From Salpingoeca rosetta (lineage: Eukaryota > Protista > Choanoflagellata), in assembly GCA_033442325.1 (NCBI GenBank), contig JAWQFM010000001.1:1610138-1674137 (forward strand): a stretch of 64,000 bases of DNA, given 5' to 3'. A program made the position numbers and the translations under genes. The stretch's first letter is position 1; each line of letters begins with the position of its first letter. Positions 5,717 through 11,700 of the stretch are shown here, in pieces. Below the pieces are notes generated by a model. It worked only from the letters and a program-made list of their open reading frames with translations. It ran no database searches and was not told the origin of the DNA.

Positions 5717-6652
5717 ACCCGCACATACTGAATTCAGTTCCATTTGCCTGCACGCAAAATCAGCAAAGCAGGCAAGCAAGACAGCCACCAAATCCATTTG
5801 TTCGCACACGCATTCCATGCAACGTTCCAAAGGGAAGCAACGTGCATGCCAGTGACCATGGCGGTGCGGGGGTCGCCAAGGCGATGATGGGGTTCCAGTG
5901 ACCAGTGGAATCACGCCCACACACGCCATGACATTGCTGCGCGCATGCGTTGCAGTGCACATGCATGTGTCTCTCCCTTCTGCCTGTCCTATTCATGTTG
6001 TGGCGAGCTGGGCCCGCGCAACACACCACTTGCACCTTCTTCGCTGGCACGACAGTGCGTGCGGTTCTTTCGTCTCAGCCCTTCTTCGTGTGGGCTGTCT
6101 GTGTTGTGTGGTGTCTGCATCGCTTGTGAGTGGGAGGAGGTGTGTGTGTGGGAATCAGTTCACGTTTGACACCTTCACTGCTGCCATTGCCGACGAGCAT
6201 TGCGTATACAAACCACACTGCTGTTTCTTCTTCGCCTTGGTTGCGTGCAAGCAAGCCAGGACGCGTGGCTGCTTTTGGATCGCGCGCAGGTTGGTCGCGC
6301 ACACACCCCATTTTCATCTCCACTTGCTTCCCCCAAACTAGTACACTCTCTCGCTCACGCAAACAAGTAATCACACACACACACACTCACACACACACAC
6401 TCACTCACTCACTCACACACACTAGCATTTACACACAAACGCACGTACTCACGCACATAATCACATCCGAACTCTCGTTGGCACAGTGCCATTCTTCTCG
6501 CCACCAGCCAGCCAGCTTTCAGTGCTGCTGATCTCCCCACACCCCTCTAAGTTCCGTGGTGGTCCCTTGTCGCCACCCCACCACTGCTGCCACCATTGCT
6601 GCCACCATTGCTGCCACCACTGTGCCACCACCACTGTTGTCACCGCCACAGT

Positions 6653-7940
6653 ATGCTGCCGGGCTGCACGAGCCGTGCCCGGTCGCGCACGCCGCCAGTG
6701 GCACCCAGTAATGGCAGCCTGGTCGTGTGGCTGACCCTGGCCCTGCCCTTGCTTTTGGTGCACCTAATCGATGCCCAGCAAACTCCGTTGATGAAGGCGT
6801 CTGCGACCACCGTCAACAACACCAGCTACATCCGAGACGACGTGGTGACATCAACAGCAACGCCAAACTCCGGGGGAGTGGAAGCGGCGCTCTCGCTCCC
6901 CGGCATCATCGGCATCGTGGGGGCAATCACCGTTGTTGCACTGGTGGTCATCCTCGCATTCAAGTACGCCAGCGACCGTCAGTCCAAGCGCTCAATGAGC
7001 GCCACAGCACTCACAGGTATGTGAATTGGCCTGCGCACTTGCTGGAGCATCACACCACATCACACTAACACTTGACTGACGCATCTCTGGTTGCACCTCG
7101 TCCCTTTCCTCTTTGCTCTTCCTTGACCCCTCTCTGTCTCTCTCACTCGCACACACACGCACACTCACCCACGCACTCACTCGCCCACACACACACAAGC
7201 ACACTCACACACAAACACACACACACACACTCACACACACACTCACTCACTCACTCACTCACTCACTCACTCACTCACTCACTCACTCACGTCCACTTAC
7301 AACCCCTCACACACCCACACACACACACACACACTCTCTCTCTCTCTCTCTCACTCACTCACTCACTCACTCACACACCCATTCACTCACACACACAAAC
7401 TCACTCACTCCAACCCACCCACCAATAGACGCGCTGATCGAGCAGTACGCCAGTCAGGGTAGCGTGAAGGTGCGCGCAGATGGCCAAGAGAGCCACGGCG
7501 TCCTGCAGAAGCAGCGGCAGGCGACTGCAGCCAACAACATCATGCCAAACGGCAGTCTCTATACGGCACGCGCGCCACGCATGCCGTGCGACGAGGCCAT
7601 CCTCGCGCCCCTCGCGGAGGACCCAGCCATGTCCTGGGACGGCGGCGACACCGTCATCTCCGTCAAGGACGGCATCTACTGCAACATCCGCGGAAAGCGG
7701 CAAACCATGGACCCGCCCTCTGAGGCCTCCACGTCCAGCGTCGTCACCGACACCAGCTCCACGGTACTCGACGACGACAACGGCGACACCGCCAACCAAA
7801 GAAGGAAGGTGCCCGAGTACATGCCCATGTACGCACGCGCAGATGAAGAAAGCGTCATCGGGCAGCTCGACCCAGAGGTGCGCGACATTCTTCGCAACGG
7901 CCGCCCGCCACCAAGCTCCTTCCGCCTCGAGTACGCCTGA
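6653..7940 (+). CDS. Orphan type I single-pass membrane protein (exons 6653-7016 and 7429-7940)
   Basis: Signal-peptide-like LVVWLTLALPLLLVHLIDA, short S/T-rich ectodomain, TM LPGIIGIVGAITVVALVVILAF. Phase-1 GTATGT..AATAG intron restores the frame. Cytoplasmic tail of about 185 aa ends PPSSFRLEYA*. Confidence 0.8.
7240..7290 (+). repeat. (TCAC)n tetranucleotide repeat, intronic
   Basis: Direct reading. Confidence 0.9.
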
Positions 7941-8768
7941 GTACGCAGCGCAATGCGACGCGCTGGACACGTTCTCGCGGCCAGCGAACACCGACTTTGG
8001 TCCAACGGGTCAATTCAGCGTTGGGTGGCCGAGTGGCGCTGTCAACACACGATCGATGACGGTTGTGTAGTTGCAGCATGTGGGCGTGTGCTTGGTCATT
8101 TGGTTGTTTGCTGTTCCCTTGCCCCGCCCTTGCATCTACTATCTTGGGGCTTATATTGGTTATGTATGTATGTAATGTATGTATTTGTTACACGTTTTAA
8201 TATTCCCGCCTTTGCACCTGTCAGGTTGTCTGTGCACGTGTGACACCTGCGAATGCGCGTGCATTCATTGCATTTATGTGACCTTGAATGGCACCGGCTG
8301 TTGCCGCTTGGCGACGGCAGCGTTCGACCAGAGCAGCCTCAGTGTCCGTTTGTTGTCTTGTTGTGAGGAGAGAAGCAGTTAGTTTGCATGTATGCGCGAG
8401 AATGTGTGTGCATGTGTATGCGTGTGTTTGCATGTGTGCATGTGTGGATGTGTGTGCATGGATGTGTGCATGTGTGTATGTGTGTATGTGCATGTGGTTG
8501 GGCGTGCGAAGGTGACACCACATGCTAGCGGTCACAACGGTCGATTAATGTAAAATGGAAGTAACGCAGCAACGCTCAGCAGGGCACAGTGGAACACGTC
8601 ACCACACTGCAGTGGAGCAAACCAAAAGCGAGGGAGAGGGGGTCGGATGGGGCAGAGAACCAGCCAGAAGGATAAAAGAACAGTACAAGCACACACGCAT
8701 GGTGTCTGCAAGCAAGAAAGGGGGGAAGGATTAAACAACCACAGGACGACAACAGCAGCTCCGGCGCG

Positions 8769-11700
8769 CTAAATGACCACCCAGCTGTCGTCAACATCAC
8801 TTAGACTCGCTTGGCGGGAGACGCGGTGCCCGAGTGCGAGCAGAAGCCTCCTGCCTTCATCGCGCAGCGCAGTCAATTCGCCTCTCAGCGTGTCTGACTC
8901 CTACCAGCGCACGCGAACACGAAGCAACCACGAATTACCCGTGGGGGGCATGTATTTGCGCAACGGGCATGCTAGAGTCAGCGAGACAGAGAGACGGCGA
9001 CAGAACCTCGGAGAGGGAGACACAGACAGACCTTGTCCACACATGCATGCACACACCCACACCCACACCCACACACGCACACACACACACACACGCACGC
9101 ACGCACGCACACACCCACACACACTCTCTCTCACGCACGCACACACGCTCTCTCTCTCCCACGCACACACACACACACACAATTGTACCTCTAGGCTGGC
9201 GCGGGTGTCGAGGCTGGATAGCACTTGGTCGAACGTGGTGTCCCAAGCAGGCAATGCACGTAACTAACTCCCAACAACGAGTGGGCACAAGAAAATAAAG
9301 ACGGTCGGTTGAGCAGGAGTTGGTGGCTGTGCCATGAGATTGAACCGCGTAGTTGGGCAACCCTCGCAAAGTCAATGTCATGCACAACTCATCCACTAAC
9401 CGGCCAGTCTGGCTGCGAGGCAAGGTGTCCAAGCAAGGGTCGCTCCTGACGTACGATTTCCAACGACAGCAACATGAACACATAATCAGCACAGAGCACA
9501 TGAACACAGACCAGAACAAAACAAAAACCTGCACACGCAGCAGATAAACACACGCGTGCACGCACACACATTCACACACATTCGCACACGTTCACACACA
9601 CATTCGCACACGTTCACACACACACACACGATTGTGATACCTTGATGAGTTCCTTGATCAAGGCCTCGATGGTGCTGAGGGTGTCTTCAATGGATGGCCC
9701 GCTGTTCGCGTATGTCTGCGTGTGCAGTGTCGTCACACGCCCCTGAAGCGTGTCCAGCTGCAAAGCAAGCAGGGGAGGTGTCGGCATGCGACGGTGAGGG
9801 AAAGGAAGGGAGCATGAGCAACACAGGTGAGCGCATCCACGCTGACGGAAAACAACACACGCACATACGCGCGAGCACGAGGCAAGAACACCAAGCACAC
9901 GATTGAATGCAGCACCCGTCCATGTGATATGACACAACAGCCAGCACACGCACACACTTACTAAAGGAGAAAACTGCATGGCAAGTGGTTCCAGAGCAGG
10001 AAAAATGACGCTTTCGAGCGCAAGCTGCCTGAGCAAGATGAGCGTGTTTTTGACAGCCTTGGGAAAGAGTGCGAGTGAGTGCGTGAGTGAGTGCGTGCGT
10101 GAGTGTGCGTGCGTGAGTGAGTGAGTGAGTGAGTGAGTGAGTGAGCGAGTGAGCGAGTGAGTGCATGAGGGAGCGAGTGCATGAGGGAGTGTGTGCGTGA
10201 GCATTGAGACACAGAGAGAGTCACTGTCACAATATCACAGTCTACACAGACCCAGAGCACACAGCCTCACAGCACTGCAGACACGAGCGCGCACCTCAAA
10301 GTCGACAGCAACACGGATGGCGACCAGCACTTCATCGGGCAAGAACTCGGCCACAACAGCGCGGTTCCTGCGGTACGTGCCAATGTGCGCTGTGTATGCG
10401 CTGAGCATGTTGGACACGACGCCTTTGGTGATTTTCGCTTCCACAGGACGCATGCGCCGCCCAGCCACCCGCTTCAACTGCAAACAGCCACCACAGTGCA
10501 CACAAGGTGCAATCAAGGTTGTGCACGCATGTGAACTGCATTAAGACAAGATTGAAATGGAGCGTCGCCTGCTCCTGGTCTACAACACAAACAACAGCTG
10601 ACACAACAGCAGCAGCAACGGCAGCAGCAGCAGCAATCAGACATAAGGCGTTGTGCACCTTTTGCAGGGTGACGAGCAAGTTCTGGAAGAGCTTGTCGAG
10701 GTCACTGTGGTGTTTGCTGATGGTTTTGGTGATGCCAGATGCACCGGCAATTCCTTTTCCCGTCGCCAACAAATGCGTGTCCTCCTTCACGAATCATCAT
10801 GACAACGCGCAAAAATAAACACACAAAGATGGGAAGCGGAGGTACATGCGCGCGCATTTGTGCACGTGTGTGAATGAGAGTGTGTGTGAGTGTCAATATG
10901 AGTGTGCGTGTGTGAGTGTGAATGTGAGTGAATGCGAGTGTGTGTGTGTGAATGAGTGAGTGTGTGTGAGTGAGTGTGTGTGAAAACGAAAGTGTGTGTG
11001 TGTATGAGGAGAGTGTTCAGATCACGTGCATCAGGTGTCATTCCAACCTGGAAGCGGGCGAGGGCGGTGGTGATGCGATTGCGAAGCTGCATCAGCTCGG
11101 GGTACATTTGTATGATCTGTCAGCAACAGGAGTACAAGGACCTCTTTCCAGTCAGTGAGCCGCGCACATGCATATCCACGCATACAGCCACACGTGCACA
11201 CGGATACATGTAACTACACACCAACACACACCCACACACACCCACACACACCCACACCCACACACACCCACACACACACACACATGCACGCACACAAGAC
11301 ACGTGCACAGGTGCAATTTCACGTGCATGCATGCATACACACACATACACACATACACACATGCAACTGCACAGCTTGCCTTCTCAAAGGCTGGGGATGG
11401 CGGGATAGTCTTGACACGGGCGAGTGTTTCCGGCTTGACAGTATCACCATTGGAGAGAGAGCGAGACACGCTGTGTTCGAGGCGCTTGTCCAGCTTTGTC
11501 GCCACCTCCAGCAAGTACAAGCAGCGCTCGCAACCAAGCAGCGTCATGCTGTTGTTGCGCTCGTACTCTGGATGCAGCACATCCACTTTGACCTTCCCGT
11601 CCTCCGTCTTAAACACCTGTTACACCACACACACACACACACACGTCCATGTGCGCATGCGGTTGTGCATGCAATGTTGTACGCGGTTGTGTATGCAATT

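What the first reader, a model, noticed from the sequence alone, without database searches (positions are those of the whole stretch)
6653..7940. Orphan transmembrane adaptor-like protein with a phosphotyrosine docking tail
Seen: signal peptide, about 35-aa S/T-rich ectodomain with an N-glycan sequon (NNT) and an SG dipeptide, one TM, and a non-catalytic tail containing GIYCNI (7677), EYMPM (7818) and YARA. Known: YxxM binds PI3K p85 SH2 domains (YMPM occurs in IRS-1 and polyoma middle T); YxN binds Grb2 SH2; a minimal ectodomain plus a Tyr-motif tail is the design of animal transmembrane adaptors (LAT/TRIM/PAG type). Inference: a pre-metazoan transmembrane adaptor.
Basis: partly seen in the sequence, partly recalled or inferred. 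Interest (0 to 1): 0.75.

Follow-up and report, generated by a model that had tools for sequence, protein, structure and literature searches.

The report
Small choanoflagellate membrane protein, tyrosine-motif tail
This is a real, expressed but lineage-restricted Salpingoeca rosetta gene (PTSG_00444) for a small single-pass membrane protein with a disordered tail. One tyrosine motif (YxN) is conserved in the only known relative and the other (YMPM) is not, so "phosphotyrosine adaptor" is plausible but untested, and it is not an ancestor of the animal adaptors.

Summary
**Observation: confirmed.** The window is Salpingoeca rosetta. The stretch is the annotated two-exon gene PTSG_00444 (291 aa): exon 1 at 6653-7016, a GT-AG intron made of CACT/CA repeats, and exon 2 at 7429-7940. 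The protein has these parts:
- a signal-peptide-like segment;
- a roughly 41-aa S/T-rich ectodomain with an NNT(S) sequon;
- one transmembrane helix;
- a 188-aa tail predicted to be disordered.

**Expression.** Public RNA data show sense-strand expression. It is about 8-13 FPKM in thecate and swimming cells and about 0-4 FPKM in colonies.

**Relatives.** A search of 1.84 billion representative proteins found one relative, a 329-aa Microstomoeca roanoka transcript product (E 1.8e-14). It has the same architecture. No paralogue and no animal homologue were found.

**Motif conservation.** Conservation sits in two tail blocks: G(S/T)LYTxRAP, and SWDxGDTVISxxDGIYxN(I/V)xGKRQ, which is 75% identical between the two species.
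- The YxN tyrosine (Y205) is conserved.
- EYMPM and the C-terminal EYA are not.
- In shuffled tails, YxN plus YxxM occur together 5.5% of the time.

**Verdict.** It is a lineage-specific membrane docking protein. SH2 docking at phosphorylated Y205 is plausible, but the same motif also fits a YxxΦ sorting signal. The PI3K/p85 reading and "pre-metazoan ancestor of LAT/PAG" are not supported. Interest is modest.

The parts
6470..6652 (+). Probable 5' UTR. It contains a 12-nt repeat (CCACCACTGCTG, 4.6 copies) at 6578-6631.
   Evidence: Stranded RNA reads of run X24 begin in the 6464-6527 bin, with none in 6400-6463. TRF result. No ATG lies upstream of 6653 in this stretch. The 5' limit is approximate.
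6653..7016 (+). Exon 1 CDS (residues 1-121 plus the first base of codon 122): n-region, signal-peptide-like h-region, ectodomain, TM helix and juxtamembrane basic residues.
   Evidence: Translation. 100% match to P0001. RNA reads of X23 and X24.
6716..6775 (+). Hydrophobic h-region, residues 22-41 (VVWLTLALPLLLVHLIDA). It is either a cleavable signal peptide or, less likely, an N-terminal signal anchor.
   Evidence: Kyte-Doolittle 19-residue windows up to 2.19. AF2 helix 21-47. An equivalent hydrophobic stretch exists in P0002.
6776..6901 (+). Short S/T-rich ectodomain, residues 42-83, with N-glycosylation sequon N55-N-T-S. It has no Cys.
   Evidence: P0002 has sequons NTT and NSS at the equivalent place. 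Only 21% identical between the two species.
6902..6961 (+). Transmembrane helix, residues 84-103 (GIIGIVGAITVVALVVILAF), with small-residue (G/A/S) spacing conserved in the orthologue.
   Evidence: Kyte-Doolittle peak 3.04. AF2 helix 82-129, pLDDT 70-80. 45% identity with P0002.
7017..7428 (+). Phase-1 GT-AG intron, almost entirely (CACT)n/(CA)n microsatellite.
   Evidence: GT and AG confirmed. TRF 7162-7410, 61 copies. No RNA reads in the non-repeat part 7017-7103. No junction-spanning read was listed, because depth was too low.
7429..7940 (+). Exon 2 CDS (rest of codon 122 to residue 291, plus TGA): the disordered cytosolic tail.
   Evidence: Translation. 100% match to P0001. X24 and X22 reads on the sense orientation, starting in the 7424-7487 bin. 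AF2 pLDDT below 50 for residues 126-262. Atlas model pLDDT 0.47.
7488..7577 (+). Conserved tail block A, residues 142-171, ending in G(S/T)LYT(A/V)RAP with invariant Y166.
   Evidence: 16/30 identical with M. roanoka, against 6-14% in the flanking linkers.
7632..7703 (+). Conserved tail block B, residues 190-213: SWDxGDTVIS(V/I)xDGIYxN(I/V)xGKRQ. Invariant Y205 has its codon at 7677-7679.
   Evidence: 18/24 identical. It is the most conserved 15-residue window of the whole protein.
7818..7829 (+). YMPM (Y252-M255), the proposed p85 site. It is not conserved. The following Y256 is conserved.
   Evidence: PEYMPMYARAD aligns with PE-APHYDTPD in P0002.
7941..8000 (+). Start of the 3' UTR. Its true end was not determined.
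   Evidence: X24 reads continue to the 7936-7999 bin. There is a gap at 8000-8127 and reads again from 8128.

Best explanation
**What is shown.** PTSG_00444 is a genuine, transcribed gene of Salpingoeca rosetta. It is shared only with Microstomoeca roanoka. It encodes a small single-pass type I membrane glycoprotein with these parts:
- a signal peptide;
- a mucin-like stalk of about 41 aa carrying an N-glycan sequon;
- one TM helix;
- a 188-aa intrinsically disordered cytosolic tail with no enzymatic domain.

**What is inferred.** It works as a membrane-anchored docking (scaffold) protein of solitary thecate and swimming cells. The working parts are two conserved linear segments of the tail, LYTxRAP (Y166) and SWDxGDTVISxxDGIYxN(I/V)xGKRQ (Y205). 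The single most likely mechanism is that a tyrosine kinase phosphorylates Y205 and an SH2 protein that prefers Asn at +2 then binds it. The D-G-I-Y context, with Ile at -1 and Asp at -3, suits Src-type kinases. That would make it a convergent, choanoflagellate-specific analogue of non-raft transmembrane adaptors such as LAX or SIT.

**What is judged to be chance.** The YMPM motif is taken as a chance occurrence in S. rosetta.
For: **Gene and expression**
- The two-exon model is identical to the annotated 291-aa protein.
- Stranded RNA reads lie on both exons and none on the non-repeat part of the intron.
- Fairclough et al. 2013 (PMC4054682, supplement) give FPKM of 7.6, 9.8 and 13.4 in thecate cells and 12.2 in swimmers. 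Chain colonies give 0.5 and rosette colonies 0, 0.5 and 3.8. Antisense reads are zero. [quoted passage not shown]

**Architecture**
-; AF2.
- The nearest language-model neighbours are all small type I membrane glycoproteins with disordered tails: UL132, TMEM119, EVI2B, TMEM154 and vaccinia A36.

**Conservation**
- One orthologue at E 1.8e-14 with the same architecture.
- Block B is 75% identical and block A 53%, against 6-14% in the linkers.
- Y, N(+2) and a hydrophobic residue at +3 are kept, while +1 varies between C and S.

**Readers are available**
- At least 92 SH2-encoding matches in this genome.
- These include an SH3-SH2-SH3 gene.

The kinase-context and SH2-preference statements come from general knowledge (Songyang-type specificity studies). 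They were not tested here.
Against: - There is no evidence of phosphorylation. The gene is absent from the only S. rosetta kinase paper supplements I could search.
- With only two sequences, conservation of N(+2) is not separable from conservation of the whole 24-residue block.
- The block runs 15 residues N-terminal of Y205. That is more than a kinase or SH2 site needs.
- The same YxN(I/V) is also a YxxΦ motif.
- Tail tyrosines are not preferentially conserved: 3 of 7, against 34% overall identity.
- The SH3-SH2-SH3 protein I looked at has no Trp at the position that, from memory, gives Grb2 its Asn+2 selectivity.
- No junction-spanning read was obtained.
Confidence: 0.4

Rival explanations
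1. Sorting-signal reading. The protein is an ordinary small membrane glycoprotein, either cargo or a receptor subunit. Its conserved Y205-x-N-(I/V) is an unphosphorylated YxxΦ signal read by the mu subunit of AP adaptor complexes for endocytosis or lysosomal and basolateral-type sorting. No pTyr signalling is involved.
For: - YCNI and YSNV both fit YxxΦ, and Φ is conservatively kept as I or V.
- The tail is disordered, as for most YxxΦ-bearing tails.
- AP-mu recognition of YxxΦ is universal in eukaryotes (general knowledge). It therefore needs no lineage-specific reader.
Against: - YxxΦ occurs in 79% of shuffled tails, so the match itself carries little information.
- The motif lies about 100 residues from the membrane.
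- It has Ile rather than Gly or a polar residue at -1.
- The invariant Asn at +2 and the long conserved flanks are not explained by mu binding alone.
- Binding to the mu subunit was not tested here.
Confidence: 0.28
2. Partner-binding module reading. Blocks A and B together (residues 142-213) form a fold-on-binding module for a cytosolic partner that has nothing to do with tyrosine chemistry. One example is a motor or cytoskeletal adaptor recognising the S-W-D-x-G-D tryptophan-acidic segment. On this reading the tyrosines are only structural.
For: - Conservation covers 24 contiguous residues, with W191, D192, G194 and D195-S199 invariant. That is well beyond a Tyr motif.
- AF2 hints at a beta bridge between 166-168 and 196-198, at low confidence.
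- Vaccinia A36 combines W-acidic kinesin motifs with pTyr sites, and it appears among the feature neighbours. This is a resemblance from memory and a lead only.
Against: - AF2 confidence in this region is below 50.
- The W-acidic consensus (L/M-D/E-W-D/E) is only half met: MSWD in S. rosetta and DSWD in M. roanoka.
- No partner was identified.
- Two sequences cannot define a motif.
Confidence: 0.2
3. Topology variant, which is independent of the mechanisms above. The N-terminal hydrophobic segment is not cleaved. The protein would then be a two-pass hairpin with a roughly 40-aa extracellular loop and both ends in the cytosol.
For: - The n-region is unusually long (21 residues) and basic (R8, R10, R12).
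- AF2 draws a 27-residue helix at 21-47.
Against: - The h-region is followed by a small-x-small site (I-D-A|Q).
- M. roanoka probably starts at its second Met, giving a short canonical n-region.
- No signal-peptide predictor was available.
Confidence: 0.15
4. Not a real protein-coding gene: a chance ORF or a mis-joined model.
For: - No junction-spanning read was listed, and expression in the 2026 runs is low.
Against: - The orthologue (E 1.8e-14) keeps the whole architecture in one mRNA-derived ORF.
- Expression is sense-strand and cell-type-regulated.
- The frame is preserved across a canonical GT-AG intron.
Confidence: 0.02

Closest known systems
Vertebrate non-raft transmembrane adaptor proteins LAX and SIT, and more loosely LAT, NTAL, PAG and TRIM
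   Same: - Short ectodomain (N-glycosylated in SIT), one TM helix and a long non-catalytic disordered tail with tyrosine motifs.
- These include YxN of the LAT/Shc YVNV type (here YCNI / YSNV).
   Different: - No sequence homology.
- No juxtamembrane CxxC palmitoylation motif.
- No ectodomain Cys for dimerisation.
- Only three conserved tyrosines.
- Restricted to two choanoflagellates.
- Phosphorylation is unknown.
DAP10 / HCST (Pfam PF07213)
   Same: - A tiny type I adaptor with a YxxM/YxN motif (YINM).
- Weak Pfam match of 14.9 bits over the stalk and TM.
   Different: - The match is below the 22.9-bit gathering cut-off and confined to the hydrophobic TM region.
- There is no charged TM residue for pairing with a receptor.
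- YMPM is not conserved.
- The tail is about 8 times longer.
CTLA-4 YVKM and similar dual-use tyrosine motifs
   Same: A single Yxx(hydrophobic) motif can be read unphosphorylated by AP-2 mu and phosphorylated by SH2 proteins (general knowledge). Both readings fit Y205.
   Different: There is no Ig ectodomain and no homology. Neither binding mode was tested.
Vaccinia virus A36 (Pfam PF05950 Orthopox_A36R)
   Same: - A small membrane protein with a disordered tail that combines Trp-acidic motifs with Src-phosphorylated tyrosines recruiting Nck/Grb2 (from memory).
- It appears as a language-model neighbour at score 0.85.
   Different: - A score under 0.9 is only a lead.
- There is no sequence homology.
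- A36 has the opposite type of anchor (an N-terminal one).

Membership tests
Transmembrane adaptor proteins (LAT/NTAL/PAG/LIME/TRIM/SIT/LAX), a functional class | Short ectodomain, single TM helix and a long cytosolic tail without a catalytic or modular domain | tested here: met
Transmembrane adaptor proteins (LAT/NTAL/PAG/LIME/TRIM/SIT/LAX), a functional class | Juxtamembrane CxxC palmitoylation motif (raft-type members), or an ectodomain Cys for a disulfide dimer (TRIM, SIT) | tested here: not met
   The juxtamembrane sequence is KYASDRQSKRS, with no Cys. The only tail Cys are C175 and C206. The predicted mature ectodomain has no Cys.
Transmembrane adaptor proteins (LAT/NTAL/PAG/LIME/TRIM/SIT/LAX), a functional class | Several tyrosine motifs conserved among orthologues | tested here: inconclusive
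   Three of seven tail Tyr are conserved (Y166, Y205, Y256). Y252 (YMPM), Y128 and Y290 are not. Only one orthologue is available.
Transmembrane adaptor proteins (LAT/NTAL/PAG/LIME/TRIM/SIT/LAX), a functional class | Inducible tyrosine phosphorylation and SH2-protein recruitment | not testable with these tools
   No phosphoproteome entry was found. It needs bench work.
Transmembrane adaptor proteins (LAT/NTAL/PAG/LIME/TRIM/SIT/LAX), a functional class | Sequence homology to an animal adaptor family | tested here: not met
   - Pfam gave nothing above its cut-offs.
- phmmer against 1.84 billion representatives found only self and M. roanoka.
- Profile and core-region word searches found nothing more.
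- The PDB profile search found nothing.
DAP10 (PF07213) | Score at or above the Pfam gathering cut-off (22.9 bits) | tested here: not met
   14.9 bits, E 0.027, covering residues 64-103 only, which is the stalk and TM.
PI3K p85-docking YxxM substrates | A conserved YxxM motif, and a p85-type regulatory subunit in the organism | tested here: not met
   - YMPM is absent from M. roanoka.
- The best PF16454 iSH2 hit is 20.4 bits, below the 31.5 cut-off, and has no SH2 hit nearby.
- The genome search works exon by exon, so absence of p85 is not proven.
Grb2-type pYxN docking sites | Conserved Y-x-N, with a hydrophobic residue at +3 | tested here: met
   GIYCNI aligns with GIYSNV inside the 75%-identical block. 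This is a motif match only. Binding was not tested.
YxxΦ-sorted membrane proteins | A YxxΦ motif in a cytosolic tail, conserved | tested here: met
   YCNI / YSNV. The motif is uninformative on its own, occurring in 79% of shuffles. Binding to the mu subunit was not tested.

The most novel reading that the evidence does not exclude
Choanoflagellates of the S. rosetta / M. roanoka lineage invented their own transmembrane phosphotyrosine scaffold, independently of animals. It would be switched on in solitary thecate and swimming cells and off in colonies. Its conserved DGIYxN(I/V) site would be phosphorylated by a Src-type kinase and would recruit an SH2 adaptor. That would be convergent evolution of the LAT/LAX design in a unicellular pTyr network.
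Probability: 0.25. Interest if true: 0.6.

Novelty: new member of a known kind. Interest (0 to 1): 0.3.

Why it matters
Choanoflagellates carry a very large tyrosine kinase, phosphatase and SH2 repertoire, but very few substrates or scaffolds of it are known. If PTSG_00444 is a membrane-anchored pTyr docking protein specific to solitary cell types, it would give a small handle on how that network is wired at the membrane, and S. rosetta is genetically tractable. It would also be an example of convergent invention of the transmembrane-adaptor design.

As it stands, it is one of the many lineage-restricted hypothetical membrane proteins of S. rosetta. Fairclough et al. report 31% of the genes as unique to the species. 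It says nothing about the ancestry of the animal adaptors.

Tried and rejected
**Searches that found nothing more**
- Pfam on each exon separately: only a sub-threshold DAP10 match over the TM region. I rejected it as a hydrophobic-region artefact.
- More relatives: word search with exon 2, with the two-sequence profile and with the conserved core 156-216.
- One metagenome scan with the degenerate patterns [AS][MD]SWD[GC]GD and [QE]ES[HV][GE]V[LV]Q[KT]: 170 pattern hits, none confirmed.
- Six-frame search of the own genome for paralogues: only self.
- PDB profile search: only noise above E 1.
- Literature: "PTSG_00444" occurs in no main text. It is not in the supplements of the S. rosetta p38/kinase-inhibitor paper. 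The flagella proteomics paper has no held supplements. Manning et al. 2008 is not held.

**Structure**
- AF2 with the two-sequence alignment gave a disordered tail, mean pLDDT 48. I ran no fold search because a low-confidence model gives meaningless matches.

**RNA reads**
- Depth was too low to list a splice joint.
- Run X1, labelled "RNA?", reads 110 nt from exon 1 into the intron at even depth. It is therefore DNA-like and gives no support for expression.

**Readers of the motifs in this genome**
- No p85 iSH2 domain above the cut-off.
- An SH3-SH2-SH3 gene exists, but its SH2 shows no Trp at the Grb2 W121-equivalent place. That comparison is from memory, so no reader for YxN is established.

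**Steps not taken**
- Complex prediction was not used. I do not claim a specific binding pair, and unphosphorylated peptides make the test weak.
- Full-length searches used the database record P0001 by id. I never typed a joined spliced sequence or sent one to a search tool. Inside one script the two exons were concatenated, only to return a true/false comparison with P0001.

Full report
**What is there.** The window is Salpingoeca rosetta, at G000:C1:1610138-1674137. The flagged stretch is the annotated gene PTSG_00444 (EGD72425.1 / XP_004998994.1 / UniRef F2TWH9), a 291-aa "hypothetical protein".
- The sequence shows an ATG at 6653, and exon 1 runs to 7016.
- The intron (7017-7428) is a GT...AG phase-1 intron, almost wholly (CACT)n/(CA)n.
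- Exon 2 runs from 7429 to the TGA at 7938-7940.
- I searched the model exon by exon, by reference. The exon-2 search returned the database protein P0001, and I used that record by id from then on.
- I did not type a joined sequence or send one to a search. One script concatenated the exons only to report that their translation equals P0001, which it does, at 876 nt.
- The 876-nt CDS length is also the one listed in the published expression table.

**Is the observation right?** Yes, in every detail.
- A hydrophobic h-region at residues 22-41 ends in IDA|QQ.
- The S/T-rich (29%) ectodomain is about 41 residues, with the NNT(S) sequon and an SG.
- The TM helix at residues 84-103 is followed by K and R residues.
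- The tail is 188 aa. Y205 lies in GIYCNI (codon 7677-7679), Y252 in EYMPM (codon 7818-7820) and Y256 in YARA.
- AF2 on the two-sequence alignment and the Atlas model both call the tail disordered. pLDDT is below 50 for residues 126-262 and the mean is 0.47-0.48.
- Pfam finds no domain. The only hit is a sub-threshold DAP10 match (14.9 bits against a cut-off of 22.9) over the stalk and TM.
- By chance alone the motifs are unremarkable. Composition-preserving shuffles of the tail give YxN in 24%, YxxM in 23%, both in 5.5% and some YxxΦ in 79%. Many other "named" SH2 motifs could equally have been picked.

**Is it a real, expressed gene?** Yes.
- Stranded 2026 RNA-seq reads (X22-X24) fall on the 5' UTR, exon 1 and exon 2, all in one orientation.
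- Exon-2 coverage starts in the bin that contains 7429. No read falls on the non-repeat part of the intron.
- Depth was too low for a junction to be listed.
- Run X1 is DNA-like and gives no support.
- Fairclough et al. 2013 (PMC4054682, supplementary tables) list PTSG_00444 at 7.6, 9.8 and 13.4 FPKM in three thecate samples and 12.2 in swimmers. Chain colonies give 0.53 and rosette colonies 0, 0.47 and 3.8. There are no antisense reads.

**Relatives.**
- An exhaustive phmmer run of the full protein against 1.84 billion representatives gave one relative besides itself. This is P0002, 329 aa, E 1.8e-14, 35% identity. It is EukProt record EP00043 of Microstomoeca roanoka, a complete ORF from a transcriptome.
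- M. roanoka is a thecate craspedid sequenced by Richter et al.. From my own knowledge of published trees, it is the closest sequenced relative of S. rosetta.
- Nothing else was found by any route:
  - a profile word search;
  - a core-region search;
  - a metagenome scan;
  - a six-frame search of the own genome;
  - a PDB profile search.
- So "orphan" is nearly right, and there is no link to any animal protein.
- The M. roanoka mRNA encodes signal-like segment, sequon-bearing stalk, TM and the conserved tail in one frame. This independently supports joining the TM exon to the tail exon.

**What is conserved.** Identity by segment:

| Segment | Identity with M. roanoka |
|---|---|
| Ectodomain | 21% |
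| TM helix | 45% |
| Juxtamembrane | 11% |
| Block A (residues 142-171, ending G(S/T)LYTxRAP) | 53% |
| Linker | 6% |
| Block B (residues 190-213, SWDxGDTVIS(V/I)xDGIYxN(I/V)xGKRQ) | 75% |
| Next 36 residues | 14% |

- The YxN tyrosine is conserved (YCNI / YSNV). Position +1 varies, Asn at +2 is fixed, and +3 is I or V.
- EYMPM is not conserved: PEYMPMY aligns with PE-APHY.
- The C-terminal EYA and the ectodomain SG are not conserved either.
- Three of seven tail tyrosines are conserved, which is no more than the background identity.

**How it most likely works.**
- *Shown:* a small type I membrane glycoprotein with a disordered, non-catalytic tail. It carries two conserved linear segments and is expressed in solitary cells.
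- *Inferred:* it is a membrane-anchored docking protein. The favoured mechanism (0.4) is phosphorylation of Y205 and binding of an SH2 protein that selects Asn at +2.
  - The D-G-I-Y context suits Src-type kinases, and YxN(V/I) resembles the Grb2 sites of LAT and Shc. Both points are general knowledge and were not tested here.
  - The genome offers at least 92 SH2-encoding matches and an SH3-SH2-SH3 gene at C14:1457149-1458877.
  - The SH2 of that gene shows no Trp where Grb2, from memory, has W121. No specific reader is therefore established.
- *Rivals:*
  - The same motif may be an unphosphorylated YxxΦ sorting signal (0.28).
  - The 24-residue block extends 15 residues upstream of the tyrosine and contains an invariant SWDxGD. 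It may instead be a fold-on-binding module for a partner unrelated to pTyr (0.2).
- The p85/PI3K reading is not supported. YMPM is not conserved, and no p85 iSH2 domain passes the cut-off in the genome. An exon-wise search cannot prove absence.

**Comparison with known systems.** In design it resembles the non-raft transmembrane adaptors LAX and SIT. It fails membership in any animal adaptor family in three ways:
- no homology;
- no palmitoylation CxxC motif;
- no dimerising Cys.

DAP10 membership fails the Pfam cut-off. The language-model neighbours are UL132, TMEM119, EVI2B, TMEM154 and A36. They support the architectural class only.

**Verdict.** The gene is a young gene of the S. rosetta / M. 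roanoka lineage, so it is not a "pre-metazoan" precursor of the animal adaptors. At best it is a convergent analogue. It is a new (unstudied) member of a known kind, of modest interest (0.3). I did not check it, and it is not independent evidence.

Noticed in passing
window 7017-7428; also 6372-6423, 6578-6631 and 8402-8496: The single intron is almost entirely a (CACT)n/(CA)n microsatellite (61 copies). CA-rich and TG-rich low-complexity tracts flank the gene. A 12-nt repeat (CCACCACTGCTG, 4.6 copies) sits in the 5' UTR immediately before the ATG.
   Followed up: partly
L007 (G000:C14:1456400-1459600), domains at C14:1457149-1458877 (+): An S. rosetta gene with Grb2-like SH3-SH2-SH3 architecture. 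The EF-loop region of its SH2 (…ERGFLLGASKTFPTIPEL…) has no Trp at the position that, from memory, gives Grb2 its Asn+2 selectivity.
   Followed up: partly
G000:C1:1584498-1586360 (-), about 25 kb left of the window; and G000:C7:1976336-1977505 (-): There are two further multi-SH2 genes. One has the order SH2-SH3-SH2, which is RasGAP-like. The other is SH2-SH2-SH3 in a single 505-aa open frame.
   Followed up: no
G000, whole genome: No PI3K p85 inter-SH2 domain (PF16454) scores above the Pfam cut-off. The best hit is 20.4 bits at C15:441664-441849, with no SH2 hit nearby. The search is exon-wise, so absence is not proven.
   Followed up: partly
window 6400-8300, RNA runs X22-X24: Within one 2026 RNA-seq study, run X24 has six times more reads on this gene than X22 or X23 (36 against 6 and 6) at similar sequencing depth. 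This suggests condition- or cell-type-dependent expression, in line with the 2013 thecate/swimmer versus colony difference.
   Followed up: no
window 8128-8300: RNA reads reappear after a gap at 8000-8127. In run X23 they have the opposite first-mate orientation. This could be a long 3' UTR, or a separate or antisense transcript between this gene and the FYVE gene that starts near 8769.
   Followed up: no
Fairclough 2013 supplement, Cluster 1 (PTSG_10106 and others): The thecate-upregulated cluster contains several tyrosine kinases and phosphatases. It also contains a PH plus IRS-type PTB protein (PTSG_10106, about 170-240 FPKM in thecate cells and about 0.2 in chain and some rosette samples). 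A pTyr docking network may therefore be specific to solitary cells.
   Followed up: no
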